A stretch of 64,000 nt of DNA, taken from Octopus sinensis. Its lineage: Eukaryota. The position numbers and the translations under genes are program-made. Each line of letters opens with the position of its first letter. Position 1 is the first letter of the stretch. The DNA lies in contig NC_043019.1 in the NCBI RefSeq assembly GCF_006345805.1, positions 10,477,360-10,541,359 on the forward strand, in the 5' to 3' direction. Shown piece after piece: positions 12,425 to 58,855 of this stretch. The notes under the pieces are model-generated. The model had not been told where the DNA came from. It did not search any database and worked only from the letters and a program-made list of their open reading frames with translations.

Positions 12425-15400
12425 CACACACACACACACACTACTTATACAGGCTATACATACATGGATAATTTGTGTAGTCTCCTCAGATTTTTTGCCA
12501 TTTGCCAGCCTCCGCTGGCCCCTGTGCCGGTGGCACGTAAAAAACACCCACTACACTCTGAGTGGTTGGCGTTAGGAAGGGCATCCAGCTGTAGAAACAC
12601 AGCCAGATCAAACTGGAGCCTGGTGCAGCCTCCTGGCTTCCCAGACACTGGTCGAAAAGTCCAACCCATGCTAGCACGGAAAACAGACATTAAACGATGA
12701 TGAAAATGAATATTTATTTGTATACATGTTTCTGGGATAAAATTCCATATTGCAGTTAAATACTTTTGGTAGGAACCAACTAAAATGCATCTATGTCACG
12801 GTTCTCTACCTTAGCCCACTGTTCAAACACCTGGAAGTGCAAGAAAGAGCAAAAGTGTGTGTGTGTATACAGGCATGCACGCATGCGTGCACATTTTATT
12901 TTAAAGCCACTTTTCAGAAAGTATTACCTAACTTTAAAATAACATTGTTCTTTTTAAGCATATCAAAAAACTTCATCAGGTAATTTCCTATTTGATGTTC
13001 GTAAAATCAAGTTTCTTCTAGTTTCACTTTCAGTTTCCCATTTGACATTCGTAAAAATTGAATTTGTTTTACTCTCAATTTCAGCTCAATTAGTTTGATC
13101 TTTGTTTCATTGTGAATCCCAACAAAATACTTACAGACCAGCAGATAATCAATGAAAGGCATACAATTAGGATGCTGGCTCAATCTTTGTTGGATTCAGC
13201 AACTTGTATTGCTTGATGTATCCTTCATGCAGTGTAGACTTAAAGAGGAAACATTAACAATGGGACTATGTGGTACTGCAATACATGCAAAAACAAAGCA
13301 AGCATTCGTCAAAGCAGTTGGTTTGAAAACAGCCATCTCATCATCATTTAACGTCCATTGTCCATGAGTTTGACCAGAGCTGGAGAGCTGCACCAGGCTT
13401 CAGTCTGGTTTGGCACAGTTTCTGCAGCTGGATGCCCTTCCTAATGCCAACCACTTTACAATGTGTGCTGGGTGCTTTTACATGGCATTGCACACACACT
13501 TCTATGTGGCACCAGCTCAGGACTCTTGCAAGCCAATCGTCTTCACCAGAAGGAGTGGCCATGACACTTCTACTGTGGGGTGTGGATCTTCTTGAGTACA
13601 GCAAGGCACCAGGTATCTTGGTCCTTTCATCCTTCTGTCATAATTCTGAGCCTACAACTTCTCTCAAGAAAGACATTTCTTATTTCTTTATTGCCCATAA
13701 TTGGCTAAACATAGAGGGAATAAACAAGGACAGACAAACGGATTAAGTCGATTACATCGACCCCAGTGCATATCTAGTACTTAATTTATTGACCCCGAAA
13801 GGATGAAAGGCAATGTCGACCTCAGCGGAATTTGAACTCGGAATGTAGCAGCAGACGAAATACCACTAAGCATTTTGCCCAGCGTGCTAACGTTTCTGCC
13901 AGCTCGCCACCTTAAAGACACCTTACAAGAAAGACATTTCTTTTAAGGTTCAGTGCAGCAAGAATACTTGTGCTGATTGGTGCAATTTCTGCCATGAGTT
14001 GTGCGAGAAGACAATTCTCAGGAGATTGAAGGGATTTACTATAACGACAAGCCTAATTATCGTGGAGGTGGATGAGTGAATTCTCACCAAGGTTCAGTGG
14101 TGAGAAAGTCACTGGGTTTTTTTGGTGGCGTGGAAAGACAAATCTGCAAAGTGTTTACTCCTCAAAGATCTGGACTGCAGTGAAAACACTTTGCTTTGGC
14201 ACGATCACACTTCAATGGGGTTTTGCCCAGCACCCATATCATTAGCACTGGCAGGTGCTCCTATAAAAATATTTACCAGTGGGCAAATGGCATTTATATG
14301 CATTCTGTTGTTGTTCGCAAGCACAGAAATTTTGGATCCTCACACTCAGACTTAATGGATGCTGCGTAAACTAATAAGGAGAGTACAGGAGGCGGTCGAA
14401 AAAGCCAGCTTCTATATATGGCTGAAGCAGGAAGACCGAAAATGGCTTGAAAGTCATAAACACGCTGACGGGAAATAACATCATTAGGTGAGACAAGCTG
14501 ACTGACAGGTGACGGTCGTTCAGAAAAAGTGCGGGCTAAAACTACGCGCCTTCACTAGTCAGTTAAGGTGAGACAGTGTCACGTGCAACTTGCTGGGGCT
14601 GCCTGCTGGAACCTATGCGGCAGGTATTTAAAGGGAGAAATTTGACAAGACAGTCAGTCACCGGCTGACACTCGCTGACGATACATCGAAGAGGCCAGGG
14701 AACAGAAGAAAGAAGACACCTCCGGAGGGGGGGGGCACGTCAAAACGGTAGAGGAGTAGGGGCCGAAACTGGACGTGGTTCCTCCTGATGATGTCTTCAG
14801 CTAACTGGATCCTATAAAGGAGCTGTTGTGGTAGCAGACCACGAAACACGGTTGTAATTCCCCAGAAAATTCTCCACCAATTTGGAAAAAACGATGTGCA
14901 CTGCCCAAGCCATCTCCATGAGTTCATTTGGCAAAACTCTATTCAAAATAAGATTTTTACTCCTTGTTCACACTCCATATCACTTATAATTATGAAATCA
15001 TCATCAAATGTTTTATTGAAATAAACTTTTTGGATTACTATGATTTTACAAGAATAAAATAGGAAATTACCTTTAATTATTCCACAGCACTGTATCTTTT
15101 ATCTTTCAGTTTTACTCTAATAGCTGAGTCACTACCAGATCTAGAGAAGTTTCAGGTGTGGAAGCAAGGTCTAGAATCAAAGGGCCTTAGAGTTAATCTA
15201 GTAAAAACCAAAGTCTTAGTAAGTAGGAAGACAGGTAAACCACAAATCCCCTCAGGTAGATGGCCCTGCTCAATCTGTAGGAAAAGTGTAGGTAGAAGCT
15301 CCATAAGATGTACCCAGTGTAATTATGGCCTCATAAGAGATGCAGCAAAATCGAAGGAAGGTTAACTGCGAAGATAGTTTTTGTATGTGGCAGATTCACA

Positions 15401-28215: not shown

Positions 28216-28246
<31 letters not shown>

Positions 28247-30033
28247 ATATATATGCACAGGCGTGGCTGTGTGATAAGAAGCTTGTTTCTTATCACATAG
28301 CAAGGCAGCGAGCTGGCAGAAACGTTAGCATACCGGGTGAAATGCTTAGCGGTATTTCGTCTGTCGTTATGTTCTGAGTTCAAATTCCACCGAGGTCGAC
28401 TTAGCCTTTCATCCTTTCGGGGTCGATAAATTAAGTACCAGTTACGCACTGGGGTCGATGTAATCGACTTAATACCTATATCTGTCCTTGTTTGTCCTCT
28501 CTATGTTTAGCCCCTTGTGGGTAATAAAGAAATAGGTATTTCATCTGCCGCTACATTCTGAGTTCAAATTCCACCAAGGTCGACTTAGCCTTTCATCCTT
28601 TCGGGGTCGATTAAGTAAGTACCAGTTATGCACTGGGGTCGATGTAATCGACTTAATCCCTTTGTCTGTCCTTGTTTGTCCCCTCTATGTTTAGCCCCTT
28701 GTGGGTAATAAAGAAATAAGAAGCTTGCTTCCCAACCACATGGCTCTGGGTTCAGTCCCACTGCATGGTACCTTGGGCAAGTGTCTTTTACTGTAGCCTC
28801 GGGCTGACCAAAGCTTTCTGAGTTGATTTGGTAGATGGAAACTGGAAGAAGCTTGTCGTATATATATGTATATATTTGTGTGTGTGTGTGCGTTTGTCCC
28901 CCCCCCCACTATCGCTTGACAACCGATGCTGGTGTGTTTGTGTCCAGAGAATTATTGTAACCATGGTTATCTCCCTTGTGTTTTTCTTGTCTTTACCAGC
29001 TTCTCTTATTTGAAACGTCATCACCTCAAAAGACGACTAACAAACGGTTTTGTCTTCAGCTTGATAAATGGCAGAATAAATAATCGTTTTGATCAGGAAA
29101 CCCTGGGTATCTCTATTTGCAAGATTTGTGGGTTTTTTTATTATAAGATTGCATATCATCATCATCATCATCATCGTCGTTTATTGTCCGCTTTCCATGC
29201 TAGCATGGGTTAGACGATTTGACTGAGGACTGGCGAACCAGATGGTTGCACCAGGCTCCAAACTTGACTTGGCATAGTTTCTACAGCTGGATGCCCTTCC
29301 TAACGCCAGCCACTCCGAGAGTGTAGTGGGTGCTTTTTACTTGCCACCTGCACAGGTGCCAGGGGAGGCTGGCAAATGGCCACGATTGGATGGTGCTTTT
29401 TACATGCCAGAGGAATTCCTGAGGTAAATCCCGTGGCATTTATATCCATACTGTTGATGACATCAGGTAGCCGCAGACAGCGAATGTGCTTTAATCAGGC
29501 GGTACTGGCAACGGTCACAGAAAATCCTGTTTTTTTTGTTTTTATTTATTTATATGTGTGTGTGTGTGTGTGTGTATCATCATCGTTTAACATCTGCCTT
29601 CCATGCTGGCATGGGTTGGACGGTTTGATAGGAGCTTGCTAGGCAAGAGCTTGCACTGGCCTTCACTGTCTGTTTTAGCATGGTTTTTACAACTGGATGC
29701 CCTTCCTGATGCCAACTACCCAGCAGGGTGAAAATATATATATATATATATATATATAGATAGATAGATAAGAAGTTGGTTTGTGAAAGCACGTGGTTGA
29801 ATATATAGAAAATAGTAAAAAGTGAAAAAACTACAGAAGGCTTGTTTTAAAAGGTTAAAAATATATATTTGAGTCAATATGTCTGAAGAATATTATAAAT
29901 TTTTTCTTTTCTTACAATGACATTGTAAGAAAAGAAAAAATTTATAATATTCTTCAGACATATTGACTCAAATATATATTTTTTAACCTTTTAAAACAAG
30001 CCTTCTGTAGTTTTTTCACTTTTTACTATTTTC

Positions 30034-30079
<46 letters not shown>

Positions 30080-33000
30080 TACATACATGTAGCCGTTGAC
30101 CCATATATCGATATATAACAGCAATGATAATCGTCCAGCTTATATATTTATAATTTTCTTTCTCTTCCCCCACTAGACTGGTGATCAAGTTCTCACTGTT
30201 GCTGACCACAAGCGATCAATTAATGATATTCAGGCATCACTGGATCAAACCATGATAATTACTGCTTCAAAGGATAACACTGCCAAGGTTGGTATCTCCC
30301 AGCTCTTCTGCTCATTTTATCATCGCCATCATGACCAGATGTCTTGTAGGTGGAGCTGAAACTTGTATTTCTTTTACTATTTCAGTTGTATCTGTTGCAC
30401 ACCTGTTTACCACTGCAGTAGTCTTGTTAGTACTTTTGTTTAACTTTTTTCTGATACTAACCCACCTGAGAATTCATCTACGAAGCAATTGCCCCAGCTC
30501 CCCTTCAGGGTTGGCGAAAGCGATGTGGTGGACAACGAAAAACCTGGCTGATGACAGTCAAGGCTGATCTGGAACCCACCTGTGATTACAGGTCTGCTTA
30601 ATCAAGGCTAACCGAGGGCTAAACAAGTATTACCATTAGTGTGGTTGTCTGTCTGTCCAGTTTATCATTTCGGCCGGGCATTGGGTCCAACCTTTTCACC
30701 CTCGAAGGATCTGTTTTATTTAAATGAATTTTTCCTGATGGAACCCCAGCTATTGAAACATGTTTCTACTCAACAAATTCCTAACCCACAGATCCCCAAC
30801 ACACCCCTGGTACTTCTATCAAGGCGGCGAGATGGCAGAAACATTAGCACGCCGGGCAAAATGCTTAGCAGTATTTCGTCTGCCACTACGTTCTGAGTTC
30901 AAATTACGCCGAGGTCGACTTTGCCTTTCATCCTTTCGGGGTCGATTAAATAAGTACCAGTTACGCACTGGGGTTGATATAATCGACTTAATCCATTTGT
31001 CTGTCCATGTTTGTCCCCTCTGTGTTTAGCCCCTTGTGGGTAGTAAAGAAATAGGTATTTCGTCTGCTGCTACGTTCTGAGTTCAAATTCCACCAAGGTC
31101 GACTTTGCCTTTCATCCTTTCGGGGTCGATTAAATAAGTACCAGTTACGCACTGGGGGTCGATATAATCGACTTAATCCATTGGTCTGTCCTTGTTTGTC
31201 CCCTCTGTGTTTAGCCCCCTTGTGGGTAATAAAGAAATAGAAATAGGGACTACCATTGTTGGCCCCAAACAAGATTGTGGGTCAGCAACTGCTGCAATGT
31301 TTATATTAAGCTTTAGGATTGTTGCATTCACACATATCGTCATTCATACAAACATTGCCTCTCACACACATTCACTCATATACACTCTCACATTCAGTCA
31401 CTCACACACTCTCACTCTCACACATTCACTCATACTCACAGACCTGCTTCTTTGATTTGTTGCACTGAATCCAAAGTATGAACCCCATCACATCACTGGA
31501 ATTTCTCTCCCTCTCTACCCAATCTCTCATCCATTGCAGCTCTTTGATTCGAGTTCCTTACAACTGATGAAGACTTTCAGAACAGAACGCCCGGTCAATT
31601 CAGCATCCATGTCATCATTGAAGGAACACGTAAGTTATAGATTTTATTTCATCATCATCATTAGCATTTAACGTCTGCTTTCCCATAATTGCATGGGTCA
31701 GAGCGAATTTAAACCAGCCATCATCATCATCATCGTTCAACGTCCGTTTTCCATGATAGCATGGGTTGGACAGTTCGACCAGGGTCTGGGAAGCCAGGAG
31801 GCTGCACCAGGCTCCTGTCTGCCTCCTGGCTCCCCAGACCCCTGTAGGTTTCATGTTCAAACCAGCCAGATGCTTCCTGCCACATCTCTACAATGTCATT
31901 TTGAAAATAAGCAATCATATCAACAAAATCTCAAAGCTAAGAGCAGTGTGAATAAATAAGCATTGCATTTGATGAAATAATCTGAATGCCAAAGGGTTGA
32001 GGCAGATTTTCTGTAGCAAGATGCCCTTCCTGTCACCAACCTTCACCTATTTCCAAGCATTAATGGGGTCTTAAGGCAGCGAGCTGGCAGAAACGTTAGC
32101 ACACCAGGCGAAATGCTTTGCGGTATTTCGTCTGTCATTACGTTGTGAGTTCAAATTCCGCCGAGGTCGACTTTGCCTTTCATCCTTTCTGGGTCGATAA
32201 ATTAAGTACCAGTGACACACTGGGGTCGATGTAATCAACTTAATCCGTTTGTCTGTCCTTGTTTGTCCCCTCTGTGTTTAGCCCCTTGTGGGTAGTAAAG
32301 AAATAGGTATTTTGTCTGTCGTTACATTCTGAGTTCAAATTCCGCCGAGGTCGATTAAATATGTACCAGTTACGCACTGGGGTCGATATAATCAACATAA
32401 TCCATTTGTCTGTTCTTGTAGCCCCTTGTAGGCAGTAGAGAAATAGGTATCAGTCTCTCTGGTTTCGGTAGGCCTGCAAAGGGCATCAAGCACCGCTCCT
32501 TCTTCAACTCCATCATCATCATCATTAGTATTTTAATGCCCATTTTCCATGCTAATGATTCTGTGAGCTCGTAGCCTTCAGTAAAAATAATAATTACAAC
32601 GATAATTATGTGTTTGTGTTTCAGGTGATCCTTGGAGGTGGACAGGAGGCTATGGAGGTGACCACCACATCAGCCAGGGTGGGTAAATTTGATGCCCGGT
32701 TTTTCCACTTGATATTCGAGGAAGAGTTTGGCCGTGTCAAAGGACATTTTGGACCCATAAACAGTGTTGCCTTCCATCCCGATGGCAAAAGGTAAGCTAG
32801 CACTTTCTCTCTCTCTTTGTGAAGTGTGCATCTGTCCTTGTTTGTCCCCTCTGTGTTTAGCCCCTTGTGGGTAGTAAAGAAATAAGTATTTCATCTGTCG
32901 TTACGTTCTGAGTTCGAATTCCACTGAGGTCGACTTTACCTTTCATCCTTTCGGGATCGATAAATAAAGTACCAGTTACGCACTGGGGTCGATGTAATCG

Positions 33001-33243
33001 ACTTAATACCTATATCTGTCCTTGTTTGTCCCCTCTGTGTTTAGCCCCTTGTGGGCAATAAAGAAATATATATTATATATAGGCGCAGGAGTGGCTGCGT
33101 GGTAAGTAGCTTGCTAACCAACCACATGGTTCCGGGTTCAGTCCCACTACGTGGCATCTTGGGCAAGTGTCTTCTGCTATAGCCCCGGGCCGACCAATGC
33201 CTTGTGAGTGGATTTGGTAGACGGAAACTGAAAGAAGCCTGTC

Positions 33244-33285
<42 letters not shown>

Positions 33286-33659: not shown

Positions 33660-34699
33660 TTCTTTTAAGAATCTGTGGAGAATAATGGCTGAAATAAAGT
33701 TATGTTTACATCACCTTCTTGTTGCCGTTGATGTCATTCTACCATTCCAGGTGATAATTGCTGTTGTTGTTGTTGGTCTATCGTTCCAGGTGAACTCTTG
33801 AGATGACTTTTGATCAAAGGTGTTCTTACCTGCGACCGTTTTTGTCTTTTATGCAGGCATAGTGAATCTAAAACTACATTAATTAATGTACCCTTCTTTG
33901 TCGTTTAGCCTTAATTAAAAATATTCCAACCGTGACCATCCTGTCTTTTATTCAGATTTAGTGTATTTAGGTCTACAAAAAGAAAATCATGTTGAATCCC
34001 TGGTCATTCTTTTATTTTTTTTTTTAAACTGAAATGTAATTTGGTAAGATTTAGCTGCTATTTCTAAAAGCAAGTGTTACCATGGCTACAGAAGCCAGCT
34101 ACCAGGACAAAGGCAATAACAACGATAACCCTTTTTACTAAAGGCACAAGGTGGGCAGGGGACTAGTTGATTACATTGACCCCATTGTTTCACTGGTATT
34201 TATTTTAGGCAGCGAGCTGGCAGAAACGTTAGCACGCCGGGCAAAATGTGTAGCCGTATTTTGTCTGCCATTACGTTCTGAGTTCAAATTCTGCCGAGGT
34301 CGACTTTGCTTTTCATCCTTTCGGGGTCGATAAATTAAGTACCAGTTACGCACTGGGGTCAATATAATCGACTTAATCCGTTTGTTTGTCCTTGTTTGTC
34401 TCCTCAGTGTTTAGCCCCTTGTGGGTAGTAAAGAAATAGGTATTTTATCGTCCCCTAAAGGATGGAAGTCAAAGTCAGCCTCGGTGAAGGAAAAGGATAA
34501 GGACATACACAGAAAGCTCCCAAACAAACTAACATGTCTGCGTCAACAGTGGTCCTAATATCTGGCAAAAGCATCTGGAGCCATTATTTGGACCTTTGGT
34601 GCATAAATGAATGGTACCATATGAAATCCGTTGGGTGGGTCTCGAGTTTTAGTGATGCACACAGGCAGACAGACAGACACAGGTTCTCAGTTTGATAAA

Positions 34700-35420
34700 T
34701 AGAGAATACTAAACTCATTCCCTATGGATACCGTATTTATTACAACTCGTGGCTTGTAAACGTATCTAACTCGCTTTCGCTCGTTAGATACGTTTACAAG
34801 CCACTCGTAATTAATACGGTATCCATAGGGAATGAGTTTGGTATTTTATTTATTACACACGAATAAACGACCATATTTTATTAAGCCCAATAACTAAATT
34901 CTTCACGTTTAGTTGTAACTTATGAATGACAAAAGTAGTGCCGCCACCGTGACCTCGGGTCATCACCATAGATTGACCAATCAGAAGCAGCGCTGTCACC
35001 GTGACCTCGAGTCATCACTATGGATTGACCAATCAGAAGCAGCGCTGTCACCGTGACCTCGAGTCATCACCATGGATTGACCAATCAGAAGCAGCGCTGT
35101 CACCGTGACCTCGAGTCATCACCATGGATTGACCAATCAGAAGCAGCGCTGTCACCGTGACCTCGGGTCATAACCATGGATTGACCAATCAGAAGCAGCG
35201 CTGTCACCGTGACCTCGAGTCATCACCATGGATTGACCAATCAGAAGCAGCGCTGTCACCGTGACCTCGAGTCATCACCATGGATTGACCAATCAGAAGC
35301 AGCGCTGTCACCGTGACCTCGGGTCATCACCATGGATTGACCAATCAGAAGTAGCGCTCGCAGTATCTGACATAGATACCAAAAATATCTCAGTGTTCTC
35401 ACTCACATGTGTGTAATAAA
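34700..35420. mobile_element. Non-autonomous element: long hairpin + subterminal IRs + 8 x 52-bp tandem array
   Basis: Hairpin 34705-34845 (loop tcgctttcgctc); IR ttattacacac/gtgtgtaataa; array 34945-35358; small stem-loop gtatct-gacat-agatac. Confidence 0.7.
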
Positions 35421-40598: not shown

Positions 40599-41838
40599 CA
40601 TATCTGTGTCACTGTATCAGTGTTTGCTCCGCTTGATAACTGGCGTTGGTGTGTTATCGTCCCCGTAACTTAACAGTTCAGCAAAAGAGACTGATAGAAT
40701 AAGTACCAGTACTTTAAAAAAATAAGTTACTGGGGTGATTCGTTCGACTAAAAATTCTTCAAAATAGTGCTCAAGTATGGCCGCAGATAAAAAAAAAAAA
40801 AACTGATACTACACTCCATCCACCACGTCACACTCCACTCCAAAACGTTTACACTCCACTCCATTACACCAAACTCCACATCACCATTCCACAATGCCTC
40901 ACCCCACTCCAAAATGTCTCACACCACTCCAAAACGTTTACACTCCACTCCACCATACCACACTCTACATCACCATTCCACAATGCCTCACTCCACTCCA
41001 CCATACCACACTCTACATCACCATTTCACAATGCCTCACTCCACTCCACCATACCACACTCTACATCACCATTCCACAATGCCTCACTCCACTCCACCAT
41101 ACCACACTCTACATCACCATTCCACAATGCCTTACTCCACTCCAAAATGTCTCACTCCACTCCATCATACCACACTCCACATCATCATTCCACACTGCCT
41201 CACCCCACTCCAAAATGTCTCACACCACTCCAAAACGTTTACACTCCACTCCACCATACCACACTCTACATCACCATTCCACAATGCCTCACTCCACTCC
41301 ACCATACCACACTCTACATCACCATTTCACAATGCCTCACTCCACTCCACCATACCACACTCTACATCACCATTCCACAATGCCTCACTCCACTCCACCA
41401 TACCACACTCTACATCACCATTCCACAATGCCTCACTCCACTCCATCATACCACACTCCACATCATCATTCCACACTCCATTCCACAATGCCTCACTCCA
41501 CTCCATTTCATTATGTTTACACTCCACTCAACTCCAGTTCACTCTGTCACTCTATAACCTGCCCGATGACATTTAGCGAGGGTTGACAGCCGAAACAGCA
41601 GACAATGATGTAATTAGCCAAAGCGGCGGCGGCGGTGGTGAAGGCTTTTATTGATAAAGACATCAAAGGAATCGGCAGGGGCGGCGGCGTGGGGGTGAGG
41701 GGGGGGGGACAAGCGAGAGACGATGGAGCGGCGGCCGAGATGGAATTTCATAATATTATCGAATCAAGGGTCGGCCGTCCCCTTTGATGAGATCCGCCGT
41801 CCAAGTCCTTCCCCATCCTACCTTCCCCCATCCGTCCG

Positions 41839-41880
<42 letters not shown>

Positions 41881-44800
41881 TCACCATCATTCTCATAAAT
41901 TTTTTTGGGATGATACGCTGAACGATTTGAGAATAGAAGAATGGTGTGATATTTATGTTAGATGATGGCGGATGTTGGATGGGCGGCCCGGGGAGCGGGG
42001 GGGGGGCGAGAAACACTAAACTTTGAATGTCATCTGTGCACAATGGACGAGTGAAACGAGAAGTTGATAGCTGTCGTTGTTCGTATGATGATGGTGGTGG
42101 TTTAGCCCTAGGTCGGTTATGATCGAACAGAGTTAAGATCAAAATTCATCCAGTTCTGGTCCATTCTCGTCAGGACCAGAAGGGGATCTTTTCGCTCTGA
42201 CCGGCAGTTTTTTAAAAATAATTTCCACGTAACTAAACACTTTTAAACTTCGTATAACTGGTAGAATGTGTTTATAAAACATCTTTTTCTCTTGACTTTC
42301 TTGAGAAAATTCTGTAGTTCCTAAGCTATTTGTTCTTTAATTTCTTGCATTTCGGCAATTTCAACCAATCAATGACAAGAAGTGTAAAAAGGACATGAAG
42401 AAGCACTATGAAACAAGGGACTACACAATCAATTCCATGTAGCCACAACTGAAGTTGCTGGAAGGAAAAGGTGGGACTGACGGAAGAAAGGAGCATTGAG
42501 AAAGGGGACAGAGAGCACCATACTTGCAGCGCAAGACCAAGCTTTGGCCACAAAGTAGAAGGTCAACCTCAGGAATGAACAAGTATTTCCACTGTACCTA
42601 TTTCTTTACTACCCACAAGGGGCTAAACACAGAGGGGATAAAAACAAGGACGGACACACGGATTAAGTCGATTATATCGACCCCAGTGTGTAACTGGTAC
42701 TTATTTAATCGACCCTGAAAGGATGAAAGGCAAAGTCGACCTCGGCGGAATTTGAACTTAGAGCGTAGAGACAGACGAAATACCTATTTCTTTACTACCC
42801 ACAAGGTGCTACACACAAAGGGGACAAACAGGGACAGACACACGGATTAAGTTGATTATATCGACCCCAGTGTGTAACTGGTACTTATTTAATCGACCCT
42901 GAAAGGATGAAAGGCAAAGTCGACCTCGGCGGAATTTGAACTTAGAGCGTAGAGACAGACGAAATAGCTATTTCTTTACTACCCACAAGGGGCTAAACAC
43001 AGAGGGGACAAACAAGGACAGACAAAGGGATTAAGTCGATTATATCGACCCCAATGCGTAACTGGTACTTAATTTATCGACCCTGAAAGGATGAAAGGCA
43101 AAGTCGACCTCAGCGGAATTTGAACTCAGAACATAACGGCAGACGAAATACTTATTTCTTTACTACCCACAAGGGGCTAAACACAGAGGGGACAGACAAA
43201 GGGATTAAGTCGATTATATCGACCCCAGTGCATAACTGGTACTTATTTAATCGACTCCGAAAGGATGAAAGGCAAAGTCGACCTCGGCGGAATTTGAACT
43301 CAGAACATAACGACAGACGAAATACCTATTTCTTTACTACCCACAAGGGGCTAAACACAGAGGGGACAGACAAAGGGATTAAGTCGATTATATCGACCCC
43401 AGTGCATAACTGGTACTTATTTAATCGACTCCGAAAGAATGAAAGGCAAAGTCGACCTCGGCGGAATTTGAACTTAGAGCGTAGAGACAGACGAAATACC
43501 TATTTCTTTACTACCCACAAGGGGCTACACACAAAGGGGACAAACAGGGACAGACACACGGATTAAGTTGATTATATCGACCCCAGTGCATAACTGGTAC
43601 TTATTTAATCGACTCCGAAAGGATGAAAGGCAAAGTCGATCTCGGCGGAATTTGAACTCAGAACGTAGTGGCAGACAAAATACCTATTTCTTTACTACCC
43701 ACAAGGGGCTACACACAGAGGGGACAAACAAGGACAGACAAAGGGATTAAGTCGATTATATCAACCCCAGTGCGTAACTGGTACTTAATTTATCAACCCT
43801 GAAAGGATGAAAGGCAAAGTCGACCTCGGCGGAATTTGAACTCAGAACATAACGGCAGACGAAATACCTATTTCTTTACTACCCACAAGGGGCTACACAC
43901 AGAGGGGACAAACAAGGACAGACAAAGGGATTAAGTCGATTATATCGACCCCAGTGCATAACTGGTACTTATTTAATCGACTCCGAAAGGATGAAAGGCA
44001 AAGTCGACCTCGGCGGAATTTGAACTCAGAACATAACAGCAGACGAAATACCTATTTCTTTACTACCCACAAGGGGCTAAACACAGAGGGGACAAACAAG
44101 GACAGACACACGGATTAAGTCGATTATATCGACCCAGTGCATAACTGGTACTTATTTAATCGACTCCGAAAGGATGAAAGGCAAAGTCGACCTCGGCGGA
44201 ATTTGAACTCAGAACATAACGACAGACAAAATACCTATTTCTTTACTACCCACAAGGGGCTAAACACAGAGAGGACAAACAAGGACAGACAAAGGGATTA
44301 AGTCGATTATATCAACCCCAGTGCGTAACTGGTACTTAATTTATCGACCCTGAAAGGATGAACGGCAAAGTCGACCTCGGCGGAATTTGAACTCAGAACG
44401 TAACGACAGACGAAATACCTATTTCTTTACTACCCACAAGGGGCTAAACACAGAGGGGACAAACAAGGACAGACACACGGATTAAGTCGATTATATCGAC
44501 CCCAGTGCATAACTGGTACTTATTTAATCGACTCCGAAAGGATGAAAGGCAAAGTCGACCTCGGCGGATTTGAACTCAGAACATAACGGCAGACGAAATA
44601 CTATTTCTTTACTACCCACAAGGGGCTAAACACAGAGAGGACAAACAAGGACAGACAAAGGGATTAAGTCGATTATATCAACCCCAGTGCGTAACTGGTA
44701 CTAATTTATCGACCCTGAAAGGATGAACGGCAAAGTCGACCTCGGCGGAATTTGAACTCAGAACGTAACGACAGACGAAATACCTATTTCTTTACTACCC

Positions 44801-47800
44801 ACAAGGGGCTAACCACAGAGGGGACAAACAAGGACAGACACACACGGATTAAGTCGATTATATCGACCCCAGTGCATAACTGGTACTATTTAATCGACTC
44901 CGAAAGGATGAAAGGCAAAGTCGACCTCGGCGGAATTTGAACTCAGAACGTAACGACAGACGAAATAACCTATTTCTTTACTACCACAAGGGGCTAAACA
45001 CAGAGAGGACAAACAAGGACAGACAAAGGGATTAAGTCGATTATATCAACCCCAGTGCGTAACTGGTACTTAATTTATCGACCCTGAAAGGATGAAAGGC
45101 AAAGTCGACCTCGGCGAAATTTGAACTCAGAACACAGTGGCAGACGAAATACCTATTTCTTTACTACCCACAAGGGGCTAAACACAGAGAGGACAAACAA
45201 GGACAGACAAAGGGATTAAGTCGATTATATCAACCCCAGTGCGTAACTGGTACTTAATTTATCGACCCTGAAAGGATGAAAGGCAAAGTCAACCTCGGCG
45301 GAATTTGAACTCAGAACACAGTGGCAGACGAAATACCTATTTCTTTACTACCCACAAGGGGCTAAACACAGTGAGGACAAAGGGATTAAGTTGATTATAT
45401 CGACCCCAGTGTGTAACTGGTACTTAATTTATCGACCCTGAAAGGATGAAAGGCAAAGTCAACCTCAGCGGAATTTGAACTCAGAACACAGTGGCAGATG
45501 AAATACCTATTTCTTTACTTCCCACAAGGGGCTAAACACAGTGAGGACAAACGGATTAAGTTGATTATATCGACCCCAGTGCGTAACTGGTACTTATTTA
45601 ATCGACCCCGAAAGGATGAAAGGCAAAGTCGACCTCGGTGGAATTTGAACCCAGAACGAAATGGCGGACGAAATACCACAAGGCATTTCACCCGACAGCT
45701 CGCCGCCATTCATCTCCACTGTACCGTATCTGTAATAGAGTAGACAAAAACCATTGCCCATATCGTGAAAGAATGTCCTAGACTTGCCCGAAATCATTAT
45801 AAGCTGTGGCGACACGATGAGGAAACTATGCAAAATTATAAATCGTAGAAAATATGCGGAAAACTGGCAAAACATTTGAATGCAACATCAACCGCTGAAC
45901 TAAACATTGTCATCGATAAAGCCTTCCTTTTGAAGCCACGTCTTATTAGCACTAGAAGACACGATGTGAGCGAAGGGTAAATATATTCTCGTTACAATCA
46001 CAAGATTTAAAGGATCTGTACGTCGAGTAGAGTCTGAGAATGATGCCAAGGACACAAACGGGGTCTTTTCCTTTTGAACGGCAGATGTCAACACAATTTC
46101 TAGTTAACTAAACACTTTTAAACTTCGTATACTGGTAGAATGTGTTTATAAAACATCATTTTCTCTTGGTTTTATAGAGAAAATTCTATAGTTTGTAAGA
46201 TATTTCGTCTGAAAATCAGAGCATTTCAGCAATTTTAACCAATCGATTACTTCCATTCAACTAAAATCATTTGCTACATCTAAAACTGAGACAACATCCT
46301 GTAACTAACCCTAAACCTCCCCCGCTAACCCTAACCCTAACCCTAAATTTTTTTTCTTAATTGTTAAATTAATTCAATTCTATTGCTTTAGTTTTTTTTA
46401 CACGCGTAACAATTAAATTAATTTAACAATTAAGAAAAAAAATTTAGGGTTAGGGTTAGGGTTAGGGGGGAGGTTTAGGGTTAGTTACAGGATGTTGTCT
46501 CAGTTTTAGACGCAGCAAATGATTTTAGCTCAAAAGAGAGCATAGGATTGGTTAAAGTTCAAAACATTAAACTACGTTAAACAAACAAATTACAATTTTC
46601 TCAAGAACGCCAAGAGAAAAAAATGTTTTATTTTGACACATTCTACCAGTATACGAAGTTTCAAAGTGTTTAGTTAACTAGAAATTGTCTGCCGTTCAAA
46701 AGGAAAAGATCCCATAAACGTATACTCAATCACTTACACTAAAATACAACATATTACTGAAAAATTCAACAGTACAGTACCATAGGTTTTGCAGTAACCT
46801 ATGATATCATACTCTCTTTTTCTTGTTTCAGTCAATTGACTGCGGCCATGCTGGAGCACCGCCTTTAGTCGAACAAATCGACCCCGGGACTTATTCTTTG
46901 TAAGCCCAGTACTTATTCTATTGGTCTCTTTTGCCGAACTGCTTAGTTACGGGGACGTAAACACACCAGCATCGGTTGTCAAGCAATGCTAGGGGGACAA
47001 ACACAGACACACAAACACATACACACACATACATATATATATATACATACATATATACGACGGGCTTCTTTTCAGTTTCCGTCTACCAAATCCACTCATA
47101 AGGCATTGGTCGGCCCGGGGCTATAGCAGAAGACACTTGTCCAAGGTGCCACGCAGTGGGACTGAACCCGGAACCCTAACTAGAAAGGGTATAGCCTGGT
47201 CAGCCTGTAATGACATGCATAAGATCTGGTCATCAAATCTAAGTAGAGACTTCAAACTTGAAATATTCAAAGCCACAGTCGAACCAATTCTACTATATGG
47301 CTCAGAAACCTGGACGTTATCAAAGAAGCTTGAGAGGCGGTTGGATGGAACCTATACTCGCCTCCTTATGAGAGCTCAAAATCTCTCGTGGAGGCGCCAT
47401 CCAACCAAAATGCAAATATATGGGAAATTACCACCTGTGTCATCTCTTGTGAAAGGTAGGAGAGTCCAGTTTGCTGGACATTGTTGTAGAGCTGAAAAAG
47501 AAGTAATTTCTACTCTTCTCCTCTGGAAGCCATCTACTCGCAACACCAGAGGGCGCACACTCTCCTACCCTGATGTAATCTCCAGGGATACAGGCATCCA
47601 GCAACAGGACCTCCGTAATGCTATGATGGACTGTGAAGTCTGGCGCAACATAGTAAATTCCATTGTCTCGACCACGGTCGAACAATGAAGATGATGAAGC
47701 TACTTGCCACACAGCCATAAAAGATCACACAAGCACAAATATATACATATAAAGACAGCCTGTATATTACCTCTTTCTCAAAATCCCCCTCTGTTTGATC

Positions 47801-50800
47801 TAGAACCTCATCAAACATCTCTTGGGTACATTTAGCTTCCATACTTTCATATTTCTTCAACAATTCCTGTTCTTCGTTCACTAATTCGGCGAACTGCTGC
47901 TCGTAGTTCCAAATTTCAATCGGTTTTCCTTCAGACAGTGAATAGGGTTCAACGGGTGTATAGACGGTGAGATTAAGCTGGGGAACCTTCCGGGGTACGA
48001 AACTGAAGACATACTTGTAGAGCAGAAAATGTTGTACAATGCTCTGGCACAGGAATTCCATGTAGAGTTTATAGTTTCGAGGACCGAGAATCTGCGACCA
48101 ATTGCTCGACTGAGTAAAGAGGTACTTCAGAAACGTGGGAAGTTTTTGTACTGAAATAGAATTTGAAAAATAGCACTGAAAACAGAACTGCAAATATAGT
48201 ACAACTTGTGGGATCTTTTCGGTTTGACCGGCAATTTTTTAAAATAATTTCCACGTAACTAAACACTTTTAAACTTCATATACTAGTAGAATGTGTTTAT
48301 AAAACATATTTTTCTCTTGGCTTTATTGAGAAAATTCTATGGTTTGTAAGATATTTGTTGGTTTTTTTTTCCTTCAATTTCTGCAATTTCAACCAATCAA
48401 TGACGTCTATTGAGGTAAAAAGCATTCTGTGCCGTATGAATATGTCCCTCGTTTAAAAAACAGATTGGGTTTATTTACATTTGTGAAGAAAAAAAGATAC
48501 CCTTGCCCCCACCCCTAACCCTAACCCTAACTCTAACCCTAACTCTAAAATAGATTGAAATGCAATAGATCGGTACTAGGGTCATAATTATGAATGACAA
48601 TATCATATGACACCGCTAGAAAAAACTGCCGGTCAAACCGAAAAGATCCCACTTGTGTTGGTATGCCCTTCTTAAATTGCACACTTATCCAAAAATTACC
48701 TAGAATTTTTTATTTATTTAATAGTTCGGCCCGCATAATGACGAGCCATGCTTCATGCGGTCTTATTCTCAAAACGGTTATTCCAACTTAGACTAAGTGG
48801 AGGCACATGGCCTAGTGGTTAGAGCATTGGACTCGCGGTCGAGGGATCGCGGGTTCGAATCTCAGACCAGGTGATGTGTGTTTATGAACAAAAACACCTA
48901 AGCTCCCCGCGGCTCCGGCAGAAGGTAATGGCAAACTTCTGCTGACTCTTTCTCTCACACAACTTTCTCTCACTCTTTCCTCCTGCATCTTGCAGCTCAC
49001 CTGCGACGGATCGGCGTCCCGTCCATGTGGGGAACCTATACGCCAGGGAAACTTAGACTAAGCGATAAAGTACACGCATGCGCAGACTGCCAGGATGTCA
49101 ATAAACAATTAGATATATCAAGGTTCTGTAAGGCGGCGAGCTGGCAGAAACGTTAGCACGCCGGGCGAAATGCGAAGCCGTATTTCGCCTGTCGCTACGT
49201 TCTGAGTTCAAATTCCGCCGAGGGGGTCGATAAATTAAGTACCTATTTCTTTACTACCCACAAGGGGGCTAAACACAGAGAGGACAGACAAGGGGATTAA
49301 GTCGATTACATCGACCCCAGTGCGTAACTGGTACTTAATTTACCGACCCCAAAAGGATGAAAGGCAAAGTCGACTTCAGCGGAATTTGAACTCAGAACGT
49401 AACAGCAGACAAAATACGTATTTCTTTACTACCCACAAGGGGCTAAACACAGAGAGGACAAACAAGGACAGACAAACAGATTAAGTCGATTATATTCTGA
49501 CCCCAGTGCGTAACTGGTACTTAATTTATCGACCCCGAAAGGATGAAAGGCAAAGTCGACCTCGGCGGAATGTGAACTCAGAACGAAATACAGCCACGCA
49601 TTTCGTCCGGCGTGCTAACGTTTCTGCCAGCTCGCCGATAAATTAAGTACCAGTAACACACTGGGGTTGATATAATCGACTTAATCCATTTGTCCCCTCT
49701 GTGTTTAGCCCCTTGTGGGTAGTAAAGAAGTATATATTAAGGTTCTGTACTCACCTTTAACTCTCTGAAGCAAGCTCCCAGCAATGTAAGGGATCTGACA
49801 AACTTGTGGCCAGGAAAAACCTTTATCGACAGCAAATCTCAGATGATTATATACAATTTCCAAATAGAGACTGTACTGAATGTCCTTGGCCCTGTCGCAT
49901 GATGGCAGATTTAAAGTACTACACAGTGCATCTTCAGCAATGACTCCCTGACGATTAATACAAAGACAGAAAGGAAGATATTTCTTTATTAACCTATAAA
50001 GGTTTTACATAGAGGGGACATTACAAGGACAGACAAGGGACATTCAGGGTACAAACTCGCTTCTTACATACAGTGTGAAAAACCGGATGGATTTACATAT
50101 ATTGTGAATGAGGGTTAAAAAATAACCCGCCGAACCTATAAAGGTTTTACATAGAGGGGACATTACAAGGACAGACAAGGACATTCAGGGTACAAACTCG
50201 CTTCTTACATACAGTGTGAAAAACTGGATGGATTTATATATATATTGTGAATGGGGGTTAAAAATTTAAATATAAATGATGATAGGATAAGTTTTGGGTC
50301 CGGGTTAGTGTGTTAACCCGCCGGTTGGTTATCCCTTTTTGGTAATCTTTTTCCTTTCTTTTATGCTCCGACCTACCGTGCAAGCACAGCCTCGTGTAAT
50401 TTCATCTTTCTTACCGCTGTCGTCCGTCTTTTTCCAAACGCTCTTTGCGACAGGTTCCTCCTCTCCATACGGATCTTGCTGGACAGATGGGCAGCGAAGT
50501 AATTCACCAGCCCACGCCCGGAGATGAATCGGCCTGTCGCAATCCCTTTCACCCGCGTCTTCCATACCACACATTTCAATGTGGTTATTACTCAGAGGAA
50601 TACGGCCTTCTTTTCTATGGCGAAAGAGGAAGGTTGTACAATCTTTATCATGGACTCAGTCGAGAGCCGTACTCTTTCTGCATCCGACATCAGCTTTTCG
50701 GCATAGGCCATCAACTCCCTCAATTCCTCACAGTGTACGAAGGCGTGCGTGAGCGTTTCACTGGCACGCCCGCACCTCGGACACATGGGGGAGAAAAGAC

Positions 50801-52499: not shown

Positions 52500-54296
52500 A
52501 ATCTTTCGGTATATGGTGTTTAAAAACGTAAATAAAAATTACAGGGGGAGGGGAATAACAAGGGGGAATAAGTCAACTTACTGATGAAGAACATAGGCAT
52601 TCGCTCTTGCTACTAAAAAGTGCACGAAACTCTTTTTCTTTGGGACAGATTTCCTCCATATAAACTCGTATAAATATGAAACGAATAAAATGTCTAGCGT
52701 TCGAAATTGACGTCGTAGTTTTCTTTTTACCCGCATCCACATATACTCCATATTTTGCTTATATGGACGTCATTATTTGTCGGAGCTGTGGAGGCGCAAT
52801 AGGATCGCGGGCATAGGATCGCGGTTTCGATTCCCAGACCGGGCGTTGTGAGTGTTTATTGAGCGAAAAAAACACCTAAAAAAGCTCAACGAGCCTCCGG
52901 CAGGGGATGGTGGTGATCCCTGCTGTACTCTTTCACCACAACTTTCTCTCGCTCTTACTTCCTGTTTCTGTTGTACCTGTATTTCAAAAGGGCCGGCCTT
53001 GTCACTCCCTGTGTCACGCTGAATATCCCCGAGAACTACGAGGCGCAATGGCCCAGTGGTTAGGGCAGCGGACTCGCGGTCATAGGATCGCGGTTTCGAT
53101 TCCCAGACCGGGCGTTGTGAGTGTTTATTGAGTGAAAACACCTAAAAAAGCTCCACGACGCTCCGGTAGGGGATGGTGGTGATCCCTGCTGTACTCTTTC
53201 ACCACAACTTTCTCTCACTCTTACTTCTTGTTTCTGTTGTACCTGTATTTCAAGGGGCCGGCCTTGTCACTCCCTGTGTCACGCTGAATATCCCCGAGAA
53301 CTACGTTAAGGGTACACGTGTCTGTGGAGTGCTCAGCCACTTACACGTTAATTTCACGAACAGGCTGTTCCGTTGATTCGGATCAACCGGAACCCTCATC
53401 GTCGTAACCGACGGAGTGCTTCCAGTGCCCACTCTTTCACCACAACTTTCTCTCACTCTTACTTCCTGCTTCTGTTGTACCTGTATTTCAAAAGAGCCAG
53501 CCTTGTCACACTCTGTGTCACGCTGAATATCCCCCGAGAACTACGTTAAGAGTGCACGTGTCTGTGGAGTGCTCAAGCCACTTACACGTTAATTTCACGA
53601 ACAGGCTGTTCCGTTGATTCGGATCAACCGGAACCCTCATCGTCGTAACCGACGAAGTGCTTCCAGTGCCCACTCTTTCACCACAACTTTCTCTCACTCT
53701 TACTTCCTGCTTCTGTTGTACCTGTATTTCAAAAGAGCCAGCCTTGTCACACTCTGTGTCACGCTGAATATCCCCCGAGAACTACGTTAAGAGTGCACGT
53801 GTCTGTGGAGTGCTCAAGCCACTTACACGTTAATTTCACGAACAGGCTGTTCCGTTGATTCGGATCAACCGGAACCCTCATCGTCGTAACCGACGGAGTG
53901 CTTCCAGTGCCCACTCTTTCACCACAACTTTCTCTCACTCTTACTTCTTGTTTCTGTTGTACCTGTATTTCAAGGGTCCGGCCGGCCTTGTCACTCCCTG
54001 TGTCACGCTGAATATCCCCCGAGAACTACGTTAAGGGTGCACGTGTCTGTGGAGTGCTCAGCCACTTACACGTTAATTTCACGAGCAGGCTGTTCCGTTG
54101 ATTCGGATCAACCGGAACCCTCATCGTCGTAACCGACGGAGTGCTTCTATCCATCCCATTTGTCGGAGCTACAAAGTTCTCCTGATGCACAATCACTTCG
54201 TGAGTGTATATACCGTTATTTAGCTATGAGAATATAATTATTTCCCCACTTTCATTTATATTTATTTTTTTAAACACCATATACTGAAAGATTACC
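52500..54296. mobile_element. TIR element hosting the family C concatemer
   Basis: IRs aatctttcggtatatggtgtttaaaaa / tttttaaacaccatatactgaaagatt(accc). Confidence 0.6.
52788..54157 (+). repeat. Family C SINE concatemer: truncated copy + full copy + three extra ~241-bp 3' units, single TSD
   Basis: Unit starts 53193, 53431, 53672, 53913; TSD atttgtcggagct 52775-52787 / 54158-54170. Confidence 0.9.
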
Positions 54297-55900: not shown

Positions 55901-56497
55901 ACCCAATACTTATTTCTTTATTACCCACAAGGGGCTAAACATAGAGGGGACAAACAAGGACAGACAAAGGTATTAAGTCAATTACATCGACCCCAGTGCG
56001 TAACTGGTACTTTAATTTATCGACCCCGAAAGGATGAAAGGCAAAGTCGACCTCGGCGGAATTTCAACTCAGAACGTAGCCGCAGATGAAATACCTATTT
56101 CTTTACTGCCCACAAGGGGCTAAACATAGAGGGGACAGACATAGGTATTAAGTCAATTACATCGACCCCAGTGCGTATATATATATACATGTGTGTATGG
56201 GTATGTGTTTTTGTTCCCTCACCATCACTTGACAAACGATGCTTACGACCTCGTAACTTAGCGATTCGGCAAAAGTGATTGATAGAATAAATATACCAGG
56301 CTTAAAAAGAATAAATCCTTGAGATGGTTTCTTCGACTAAAACCGTTTAAGGTGGTGCTCCAGCATGGCCGCAGTCAAATGACTGGGACAAGTAAAAGAA
56401 TAAAAGCCTGCGATGGACCAGCATCCAATCCAGTAGAAGTAGTGTTGGAATCTCAGTCATTTATTCACCATGGAAAACCAAGTTAAGCTCCCGGCTT

Positions 56498-58320: not shown

Positions 58321-58855
58321 GACAAGAAACTGCAAAATATGAAACAACGTGGTTAATGTTTGTGCTGGTAATGACCCCGGGATCCAAGTTAACTGTGTCA
58401 ATATCCGTTTGGTTAAAATGCTGAATTATGTCAGACCTAAAACATCGCAGACGAAACTCAACTGACTAAATTCTTTGTTGTTATGAACCATTTCTCGTTT
58501 CTGCTTGCTAAGACCTCAAACTAAATGGACGATAAACAAAGGTTGCAGTATTTAGATTCTGAAAAAGACGGGACAGGGACCTCTATGCGGTCGTTTGACT
58601 TACTAGACACAGTAGCCAAATAAATCTCCATCAAATCACATCCAATTTCTTTATTAGCCACAAGGGCCCAAACATAGAAGGGGACAATACAGCCTGATTG
58701 GGGTCAGACACACAATGATTATATGACTTTTAAAATTTTACGAAATCGAATGAGATACAACAGGGACGAAATACAAGCAGAGTGATGGCTTACGCTCCGA
58801 CCCCACGAGCCCCATTCTCCAACTGAAACTTTTGTAACAGTTCTACCAGCTCGCC

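What the first reader, a model, noticed from the sequence alone, without database searches (positions are those of the whole stretch)
42588..45725. 17-unit SINE concatemer inside one target-site duplication: a SINE-derived satellite that may be mobile
Seen: one degenerate tRNA-like head (45660-45706) followed by 17 body units of 170-186 bp, and the whole 3.1 kb is bounded by one 11-bp direct repeat (tccactgtacc). Each unit keeps the B box (GAGTTCAAATTCC) but not the A box, and I see no T4 Pol III terminator on the SINE-sense strand, so read-through multimeric transcripts are possible. Dimers with the identical junction (aaagaaata|ggtatttc) sit at four or more independent loci in the window. 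Unit ends are self-complementary (tatttc...gaaata). Inference: multimeric SINE RNAs are retrotransposed and then seed local satellites, a SINE-to-satellite-to-SINE cycle. SINE-derived satellites are known in reptiles; I do not recall this being described for cephalopods.
Basis: partly seen in the sequence, partly recalled or inferred. Interest (0 to 1): 0.8.

Follow-up and report, generated by a model that had tools for sequence, protein, structure and literature searches.

The report
SINE insertion expanded into 17-unit array
One copy of a short retrotransposon (SINE) in an octopus-type genome carries its 184-bp body 17 times in a row inside a single insertion scar, most likely through local duplication after insertion. 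This route from mobile element to small satellite is already described in reptiles and clams.

Summary
Window 42599-45677 (SINE sense is the minus strand) is 17 head-to-tail units of 170-186 bp. One shortened head sits at 45678-45707, and an 11-bp direct repeat bounds the whole (14 bp with one mismatch). Joining the flanks restores a decayed LINE zinc-knuckle reading frame, so the 3.1 kb is one insertion. One sub-claim fails: the sense strand now has two T4 runs and one T5 run.

The array grew where it lies. Subsets of units share derived bases that no dispersed copy in the window has. Nearest relatives of units are other array units, down to 0 substitutions, and units 5-9 show two-unit duplication steps.

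The exact junction (SINE 3' end joined to head position 48) recurs at six other loci. Two of these are head+2-unit copies inside their own 13- and 16-bp duplications, and two are 5'-truncated inside unit 1. A two-unit form of the SINE was therefore probably retrotransposed. Nothing shows that the 17-mer moved or seeds new SINEs.

SINE-derived arrays inside one target-site duplication are published for squamates and a blood clam. I rate this a new member of a known kind, of modest interest. Neither a genome-wide census nor an orthologous site could be reached with these tools.

The parts
42585..42598 (-). 3' copy of the target-site duplication (sense GGTACAGTGGAAAT; exact 11-bp core 42588-42598)
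   Evidence: It abuts the last base of unit 17.
42599..45677 (-). 17 head-less SINE units. u01 is 45508-45677 and u17 is 42599-42784. Each unit runs from GGTATTTC (head position 48) to the SINE 3' end ...AAAGAAATA.
   Evidence: TRF; unit split and alignment.
44053..44970 (-). Units u05-u09, a block of two-unit (about 368 bp) duplication steps. Identity at a shift of two units is 0.98, 1.00 and 0.99, against 0.93 at a shift of one. u06 and u08 differ by 0 substitutions.
45678..45707 (-). Shortened SINE head, GGCGGCGAGCTG-T-CGGGTGAAATGCCTTGT. It lacks 17-18 nt (GCAGAAACGTTAGCACGC) present in the other heads of the window.
   Evidence: Alignment to the window consensus head; other heads.
45708..45714 (-). 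4-7 extra bases between the duplication and the head (GATGAAT). Other copies carry 0-13 such bases.
45712..45725 (-). 5' copy of the target-site duplication (sense GGTACAGTGGAGAT; exact 11-bp core 45715-45725)
42640..42644 (-). T5 run on the SINE-sense strand in unit 17. T4 runs lie at 43677-43680 and 44228-44231.
42500..42587 (+). Left flank, a decayed LINE ORF2 C-terminal region (..ILAAQDQALATK..). Together with 45726-45840 it reads ..PLYRICNRVDK-TIAHIVKECPRLARNHYKLWRHDE across the empty site.
   Evidence: Joined flanks translated; weak zf-RVT match, E = 0.05, below the Pfam cut-off.
28334..28718 (+). Copy A: head + 2 units with the same junction, inside a 13-bp duplication AGAAGCTTG(T/C)TTC.
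30853..31239 (+). Copy B: head + 2 units, same junction. No duplication detected.
32107..32445 (+). Copy C: head + 2 units (the second carries deletions). The 3' flank starts GGTAT.
32831..33068 (+). Copy D: the last 54 bp of one unit + a full unit, same junction (a 5'-truncated two-unit copy).
49244..49603 (-). Copy G: head + 2 units inside an exact 16-bp duplication GGTACTTAATTTATCG. It is inserted into an older inverted monomer (49162-49223 + 49636-49732).
55911..56177 (-). Copy H: the last 82 bp of one unit + a full unit, same junction (a 5'-truncated two-unit copy).
34238..34438 (+). Copy E: monomer with head, inserted at GGTATTT in an older inverted SINE.
13681..13875 (-). Copy F: monomer with head inside an exact 16-bp duplication AGAAATGTCTTTCTTG.
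49979..50786 (-). LINE-like fragment (CCHC-type ORF end at 50592-50786, then 3' UTR). Its last ~60 bp match the SINE tail (...GTCCCCTCTATG...AATAAAGAAATA). Candidate partner LINE.
   Evidence: weak zf-RVT match, E = 0.0055.

Best explanation
A SINE with a tRNA-like head, a body and a LINE-derived tail inserted once, by LINE-mediated target-primed reverse transcription, into an old LINE fragment about 9 kb downstream of the EIF3I gene. It probably arrived carrying one or two body units. The two-unit form, in which the SINE 3' end is joined to head position 48, appears to be a retrotransposing variant of the family.

After insertion the tandem units misaligned during replication or recombination (unequal exchange or slippage). 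The array grew stepwise to 17 units, partly in two-unit steps, while the flanks and the single head stayed put.

Shown:
- one insertion with one duplication pair;
- in-array relatedness of the units;
- recurrence of the same junction elsewhere in the window.

Inferred:
- the number of units at insertion;
- the recombination mechanism;
- that the dimers moved as dimers.
For: 1. One head, one 3' end, and an 11/11 (13/14) direct repeat. The joined flanks restore a continuous LINE CCHC motif.
2. Eight alignment columns carry derived bases shared by 3-9 array units and by none of 12-15 dispersed units. For example, TTTCAGGG occurs in 9 units and TTTCGGAG in 7, while all dispersed copies have TTTCGGGG or another state.
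3. Every unit except u01 has its nearest relatives inside the array. Differences range from 0 to 11%. The mean is 6.9% within the array, 9.9% to dispersed copies and 11.2% among dispersed loci.
4. Shared deletions mark adjacent units (u01/u02 and u13/u14). Identity at a shift of two units is 0.98-1.00 for u05-u09.
5. Dimers A and G sit inside their own duplications. D and H are truncated inside unit 1. A's flank has no GGTA, so its junction cannot have come from microhomology with the flank.
6. The junction coincides with the exact SINE 3' terminus, which is the point where reverse transcription starts. It therefore arose in a retrotransposition context at least once.
7. The tail is shared with a LINE-like 3' end.
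8. The same architecture is published: TSD1-(SINE)n-TSD1 arrays of up to 15 units in the blood clam (PMC11481361) and SINE-derived satellites with one longer terminal unit in squamates, where unequal recombination is proposed (PMC10702118).
Against: 1. The array-private variants could have arisen in a source array elsewhere and been copied here in one event. The window alone cannot exclude that.
2. Within-array divergence of up to 11% is as large as divergence between dispersed copies. Either growth began very early, or several unit types were present from the start.
3. Position-specific differences between unit 1 and unit 2 across dimers, the signature of a dimeric master, are inconsistent. 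A and H agree at CTAT(A/G)TC versus CTTTGTC, but D does not.
4. Only 11 copies with an intact 3' end were available. There is no genome-wide census, no orthologous locus and no read-level support.
Confidence: 0.6

Rival explanations
1. The array, or most of it, was retrotransposed as one long multi-unit RNA from a source array. Tandem arrays would then act as master genes in a SINE-satellite-SINE cycle.
For: - There is one head, one 3' end and one duplication pair, and the unit consensus has no T4.
- TSDs or 3' flanks of 4 of 11 copies begin GGTA(Y)(T)(T), the first bases of the next unit (P about 3e-8 against background). In target-primed reverse transcription this kind of microhomology suggests template RNAs that run on into a following unit. 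Three other copies have duplications starting AGAA or GAAATA, which match the tail itself.
Against: - The window holds no copies with 3-16 units.
- This copy's head lacks the A-box-like segment, and the sense strand has T4/T5 runs.
- Very recent (0-1%) and old (9-11%) duplications coexist, which fits continued local growth.
- The GGTA preference can equally be an endonuclease target preference.
Confidence: 0.12
2. The array grew by repeated in-register insertions. New SINE cDNAs are primed at the preferred target GGTA at each unit start, and their 5' ends are resolved by homology with the resident unit, adding one head-less unit per event.
For: - Insertions prefer GGTA-type targets. E and G hit the same GGTAYTT site in inverted SINE copies at the same nucleotide.
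- The unit start GGTATTTC is such a site.
- The model explains a junction made of an exact 3' end plus an internal position, with no intervening duplication.
Against: - Imported units should resemble the active master of the time. Instead, units share array-private bases and deletions with their neighbours.
- No intermediate was seen in the window (old head + short duplication + new full head).
Confidence: 0.1
3. Multi-unit copies form during a single retrotransposition event. The reverse transcriptase reaches the 5' end of a SINE RNA cut in the loop of the head hairpin (position 47/48) and jumps end-to-end onto the 3' end of another SINE RNA.
For: - The unit starts immediately 3' of the tetraloop of a predicted 13-bp hairpin. 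Relaxed ARAGORN places the anticodon loop there.
- An older related SINE family with a different tail has a two-unit copy whose junction lies within 2-4 nt of the same head position (4329-4565).
- End-to-end template jumping is known for R2 reverse transcriptase (from my own knowledge).
Against: - No head-less monomer starting exactly at GGTATTTC with its own duplication is present in the window.
- A processive jump model predicts a geometric series of 1 > 2 > 3 units, not the observed 1, 2 and 17.
- The hairpin and the tRNA likeness are weak. The fold z-score is -1.1, and neither Rfam nor default ARAGORN gives a hit.
Confidence: 0.08
4. Assembly artefact: a one- or two-unit copy was expanded by the assembler.
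For: Tandem repeats are error-prone in assemblies. Several units carry single-base indels that could be read errors.
Against: The units are not identical. They differ by 0-11%, with structured, nested variant patterns and three different unit lengths. Collapse is the usual artefact, not expansion.
Confidence: 0.04

Closest known systems
SINE-derived satellites (sSats) of squamate reptiles (Vassetzky, Kosushkin & Ryskov 2023, PMC10702118)
   Same: - Tandem repeats of part of a tRNA-related SINE, with one longer terminal unit that reaches the SINE terminus.
- Unit length in the 150-180 bp class.
- Di- and trimeric alternation of monomers in some arrays.
- Unequal recombination proposed as the mechanism.
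   Different: - The authors found no true dimeric SINEs. Here a two-unit form with a fixed junction recurs at six loci, some with their own duplications.
- Their arrays reach about 1000 units and favour subtelomeres. Here there is one 17-unit array, intergenic, with unknown chromosomal position.
TSD1-(SINE)n-TSD1 arrays in the blood clam Scapharca broughtonii (Mob DNA 2024, PMC11481361)
   Same: - A mollusc.
- One duplication pair around the whole array, with arrays of 4-15 units.
- First element with a complete head, internal units truncated in the head.
   Different: - In the clam the internal units are also truncated in the 3' tail. Here every unit keeps the complete tail to its last base, so the junction is the true SINE 3' end.
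- The clam elements belong to different SINE families, those with highly conserved central domains.
Dimeric SINEs that amplify as dimers (e.g. Alu) and SINE multimers (Dip/B1 in jerboa), as summarised in PMC10702118
   Same: Two units transcribed and inserted as one element. Copies are flanked by one duplication, and 5'-truncated copies start inside the first unit.
   Different: Alu-type dimers are head-plus-head fusions of two monomers. Here only one head is present and the second unit is a head-less repeat of body plus tail. Transcription was not tested.
Retrozymes: tandem repeats with hammerhead ribozymes that give circular RNAs (from my own knowledge)
   Same: Tandem units of about 170-400 nt of a non-autonomous retroelement.
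   Different: No ribozyme family matches the array, even at E <= 1. The unit fold is no better than shuffled sequence.

Membership tests
tRNA-related, LINE-dependent SINE | Head derived from a tRNA, with internal A and B boxes | tested here: inconclusive
   - B-box-like GAGTTCAAATTCC is present in nearly all copies.
- ARAGORN at default settings finds none. Rfam finds no tRNA hit at gathering score or at E <= 1.
- Relaxed ARAGORN (70% threshold) gives only a poor cloverleaf for the consensus head.
- The A-box match is weak.
tRNA-related, LINE-dependent SINE | Copies flanked by variable target-site duplications | tested here: met
   - Array: 11-14 bp.
- A: 13 bp with 1 mismatch.
- F: 16 bp. G: 16 bp.
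- N/O: 17 bp with 1 mismatch.
- E: about 7-9 bp.
- No duplication found for B, C, D, H and I.
tRNA-related, LINE-dependent SINE | 3' tail shared with a partner LINE | tested here: met
   The last ~60 bp align with the 3' end of a LINE-like fragment at 49979-50786 and with another element at 58645-58687. The LINE identity of the fragment rests on a sub-threshold zf-RVT match.
tRNA-related, LINE-dependent SINE | Transcription by RNA polymerase III | not testable with these tools
   No expression data are available.
SINE-derived satellite (sSat sensu PMC10702118) | Head-to-tail tandem repeats of a portion of a SINE | tested here: met
   17 units spanning SINE positions 48 to the 3' end.
SINE-derived satellite (sSat sensu PMC10702118) | Longer terminal unit that continues to the SINE terminus | tested here: met
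   u01 continues into the head (45678-45707), and u17 ends at the SINE 3' end.
SINE-derived satellite (sSat sensu PMC10702118) | Many loci or long homogenised arrays, heterochromatic or subtelomeric location | not testable with these tools
   The window holds only one array. No cephalopod genome could be searched by DNA.
TSD1-(SINE)n-TSD1 array (PMC11481361) | One duplication pair around the whole array | tested here: met
   The empty site is restored by joining the flanks.
TSD1-(SINE)n-TSD1 array (PMC11481361) | Internal units truncated at both head and tail | tested here: not met
   The units are truncated in the head only. All 17 end in ...AAAGAAATA.
Dimeric SINE amplified as a dimer | Two-unit copies at independent loci, each with its own duplication | tested here: met
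   A (13 bp) and G (16 bp). B and C lack a detectable duplication.
Dimeric SINE amplified as a dimer | 5'-truncated copies that begin inside the first unit | tested here: met
   D (starts 54 bp before the junction) and H (82 bp before).
Dimeric SINE amplified as a dimer | Diagnostic differences between unit 1 and unit 2 shared across loci | tested here: inconclusive
   A and H share CTAT(A/G)TC in unit 1 versus CTTTGTC in unit 2, and CATCTG in unit 2. D2 mixes both states. B and G show no such pattern. The sample is too small.
Retrozyme / ribozyme-bearing tandem repeat | Self-cleaving ribozyme motif in each unit | tested here: not met
   No ribozyme family matches in the window at gathering score or at E <= 1.

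The most novel reading that the evidence does not exclude
Multi-unit SINE RNAs are the actual retrotransposition templates in this genome. Under this reading, transcripts run from one unit into the next, the partner LINE's reverse transcriptase starts at an internal tail, and the target DNA primes on the next unit's GGUAUUU. That would explain the GGTA-initiated duplications. Tandem copies would then serve as master genes, and arrays and dispersed copies would feed each other.
Probability: 0.15. Interest if true: 0.6.

Novelty: new member of a known kind. Interest (0 to 1): 0.35.

Why it matters
SINEs make up a large share of octopus genomes: 4% in O. bimaculoides and 11.6% in a recent O. vulgaris annotation. 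Repeat annotation there leaves most SINE families unclassified.

A family whose common form has two body units, and which can grow into arrays, affects several things:
- how copies are counted and dated;
- how tandem-repeat and SINE annotations overlap;
- where recombination-prone repeats sit near genes.

It also gives a clean, datable example of the first steps from interspersed element to satellite, in a third animal group after squamates and bivalves.

If multi-unit RNAs turn out to be the templates, that would be a less usual way for a SINE to propagate. The present evidence for this is indirect.

Tried and rejected
1. Reaching other octopus loci through translated array ORFs. The 148-aa ORF at 43120-43566 gave one distant Logan hit only. 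No octopod assembly with ORF calls is in that collection.
2. Exact-pattern scans for the junction and for the SINE core in metagenome contigs (2 scans) and genome contigs (1 scan): 0 hits.
3. The orthologous site via EIF3I. The exon at 32610-32792 found only exon-sized ORFs at 91% identity or less. The fetched contigs (L004-L009) carry no copy of this SINE and share only the exon, at 77% nucleotide identity. They are too distant to be useful.
4. A LINE RT query gave one named relative, Octopus bimaculoides LOC106872658 (79% identity). Its 20.5-kb locus L010 contains the same SINE head and core (up to 94% identity) and a 38-bp tail fragment inside a 17-bp duplication, but no multi-unit copy. 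This supports an octopod origin for the window. It does not test the array.
5. Retrozyme or ribozyme idea: rejected.
6. Pairing of unit ends as a structural feature: rejected.
7. In situ duplication through microhomology between the internal GGTATTT and a GGTA-starting 3' flank. This would give the observed junction, but dimers A and D have non-GGTA flanks and monomer E has the best GGTATTT flank. It cannot be the general route.
8. Recombination between the GAAAT of the head and the GAAAT of the tail. It predicts a junction that retains GCTTAGC, which is never seen.
9. Age asymmetry between unit 1 and unit 2: no consistent trend.
10. A literature search for the Logan run accessions returned nothing.


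Full report
**What is there.** TRF finds one array at 42595-45677 with period 184, 17.0 copies and 92% matches. Read on the minus strand, which is the SINE-sense strand, and cut at the recurring motif GAAATA|GGTATTTC, it resolves into 17 units of 170-186 bp.

Upstream of the first unit lie 30 bases of SINE head (45678-45707) and 4-7 extra bases. The last unit ends at ...AAAGAAATA.

The 11-mer GGTACAGTGGA abuts both ends (42588-42598 and 45715-45725) and extends to 14 bp with one mismatch. I estimate the chance of such an abutting repeat at about 4e-6.

Joining the flanks gives a continuous, decayed LINE ORF2 C-terminus..ILAAQDQALATK..PLYRICNRVDK-TIAHIVKECPRLARNHYKLWRHDE. It has a weak zf-RVT match. 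The 3.1 kb is therefore one insertion into an older LINE fragment.

The site lies about 9 kb downstream of the last coding exon of an EIF3I gene, whose exons run from 21859 to 33653 on the plus strand.

**What the element is.** Eleven further copies in the window define the full element:
- a 47-nt head, AAGGCRGCGAGCTGGCAGAAACGTTAGCACGCCGGGCGAAATGCTTAGC;
- then the 184-nt segment that is repeated in the array.

The segment contains a B-box-like GAGTTCAAATTCC. It ends in about 60 bp that also form the 3' end of a LINE-like fragment at 49979-50786 and of another element at 58645-58687.

Copies carry duplications of 7-17 bp, and several are 5'-truncated. These are the marks of a LINE-dependent SINE.

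The tRNA origin of the head is only weakly supported. Default ARAGORN and Rfam find nothing, and relaxed ARAGORN draws a poor cloverleaf.

The array's own head lacks 17-18 nt of the consensus, including the A-box-like part.

A LINE RT in the window has its closest named relative in Octopus bimaculoides. A 20.5-kb stretch of that genome contains the same SINE head and core (up to 94% identity) and the same tail. An octopod origin is therefore plausible, though the source species was not identified.

- The head-specific segment is 45678-45707(14), not 45660-45706.
- The sense strand is not free of T4. There are T4 runs at the starts of units 9 and 12 (GGTATTTTG) and a T5 run in unit 17. The unit consensus has none.
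- The complementary unit ends are real, but they do not pair in the predicted fold. That fold is no more stable than shuffled sequence.

**How the array arose.** Array units are each other's closest relatives. u06 and u08 differ by 0 substitutions, u03/u04 and u07/u09 by 1.1%, and the most distant pairs by 11%. Mean difference is 6.9% within the array, 9.9% to dispersed units and 11.2% among dispersed loci.

Eight alignment columns carry derived bases shared by 3-9 array units and absent from all dispersed copies. Most notably, TTTCAGGG occurs in nine units and TTTCGGAG in seven.

Adjacent units share deletions (u01/u02 and u13/u14). For u05-u09 the identity at a shift of two units is 0.98-1.00, against 0.93 at a shift of one.

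This is the pattern of stepwise local duplication over a long period, partly in two-unit steps. It is not the pattern of units imported from outside.

It does not strictly exclude that an already-structured array was copied here from elsewhere. No evidence for that exists in the window, though, and this copy now has a damaged head and T4/T5 runs.

**The recurrent junction.** The same junction occurs at six other loci.
- A, B, C and G are head + 2 units. A and G lie inside their own 13- and 16-bp duplications.
- D and H start inside unit 1, as 5'-truncated cDNAs would.

The junction's left side is the exact SINE 3' terminus, the point where reverse transcription starts. The junction therefore arose in a retrotransposition context.

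A's flank offers no microhomology that could have produced the junction in place. The simplest reading is that a two-unit variant became a source element and spread.

The unit numbers seen are 1 (three or four copies), 2 (six copies) and 17 (one copy). That fits a discrete dimer better than a processive multimerisation.

Position-specific differences between the two units are shared by A and H but not by D, so this test is inconclusive.

**Two observations bearing on mechanism.**

First, 4 of 11 copies have duplications or 3' flanks beginning GGTA(Y)(T)(T), the first bases of a unit (P about 3e-8). E and G hit the same nucleotide of the same motif in inverted older SINE copies. Three others, including one in O. 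bimaculoides, begin AGAA or GAAATA, which matches the tail. There are two possible explanations:
- the endonuclease prefers such sites; or
- the target primes by microhomology on RNAs that run on into a next unit, which would mean multi-unit templates.

Second, the unit starts immediately 3' of the tetraloop of a predicted 13-bp hairpin in the head. A two-unit copy of an older related family with a different tail has its junction within a few bases of the same position (4329-4565). This hints at a position-specific process, such as loop cleavage plus end-to-end template jumping, or in-register insertion at the GGTA site. It rests on one old copy and on weak structure predictions.

**Comparison with what is known.**
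- SINE-derived satellites with one longer terminal unit are described in 56 squamate genomes (PMC10702118).
- TSD1-(SINE)n-TSD1 arrays of 4-15 units are described in the blood clam (PMC11481361).
- SINEs that amplify as dimers are classical.

The present case differs in two ways. Every unit keeps the complete tail, and a fixed two-unit form recurs with its own duplications.

My literature searches found no report of this for cephalopods. Recent octopus repeat annotations do not mention it.

**Verdict.** This is a real and well-preserved example of a known phenomenon in a new animal group. The claim that the satellite itself is mobile is not supported. The idea that multi-unit RNAs are templates remains open at low probability.

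Noticed in passing
window 21859-33653 (+): Exons of an EIF3I (eIF3 subunit I, WD40) gene at about 21859-21912, 23387-23449, 30228-30290, 31537-31635, 32610-32792 and 33570-33653. SINE dimers A-D lie in its introns in sense orientation. D starts 39 bp after the exon that ends at 32792.
   Followed up: partly
window 46285-46504: A ~220-bp near-perfect palindrome whose arms contain (CCCTAA)n/(TTAGGG)n telomere-like repeats. It gives strong sub-threshold matches to several plant miRNA hairpin families on both strands, so it looks like a MITE-type foldback and not a miRNA. A further CCCTAA run lies at 48513-48548.
   Followed up: no
window 49979-50340 (-): The 3' UTR of the candidate partner LINE carries its own internal tandem duplication of about 133 bp. 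It ends 12 bp before the 3' terminus, so its junction type differs from that of the SINE.
   Followed up: partly
window 34238-34438 and 49244-49603: Two independent insertions of the SINE (E and G) into the same nucleotide of the motif CTG|GTAYTTA in older, inverted copies of the same SINE. This points to a target hotspot.
   Followed up: partly
window 4329-4565 (+): A two-unit copy of an older related SINE family (same head and core, different tail ending in (ATT)n). Its unit junction lies within a few bases of head position 48.
   Followed up: partly
window 34945-35358; 53193-54147; 40827-41480; 22295-22589: Other young tandem arrays: 52 bp x 8 (97%), 241 bp x 4 (96%), 48/301-bp CACTCCA-rich repeats (86-94%), and 66/128 bp x 2-4. 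The window is generally rich in short tandem arrays.
   Followed up: no
window 42172-42376 and 46049-46250 (also 54838, 9815, 48210, 52499, 17579): A ~195-bp interspersed repeat with at least 8 copies in the window. Two copies flank the array in direct orientation (79.5% identical), 220-320 bp outside the duplication. They are probably unrelated to the array.
   Followed up: no
window 1087-3090 (+), 25716-26192 (-), 47137-47688 (+): Decayed LINE ORF2 fragments. RVT_1 matches at E = 7e-30 for 1587-2474. The closest named relative is Octopus bimaculoides LOC106872658 at 79% identity.
   Followed up: partly
L010 20465-20520 (Octopus bimaculoides CM046609.1): A 38-bp 5'-truncated copy of the same tail (...CCCCTTGTGGGCAATAAAGAAATA) inside an exact 17-bp duplication AGAATGTACTTCTTTTC. 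The tail and LINE system therefore also operated in O. bimaculoides.
   Followed up: partly
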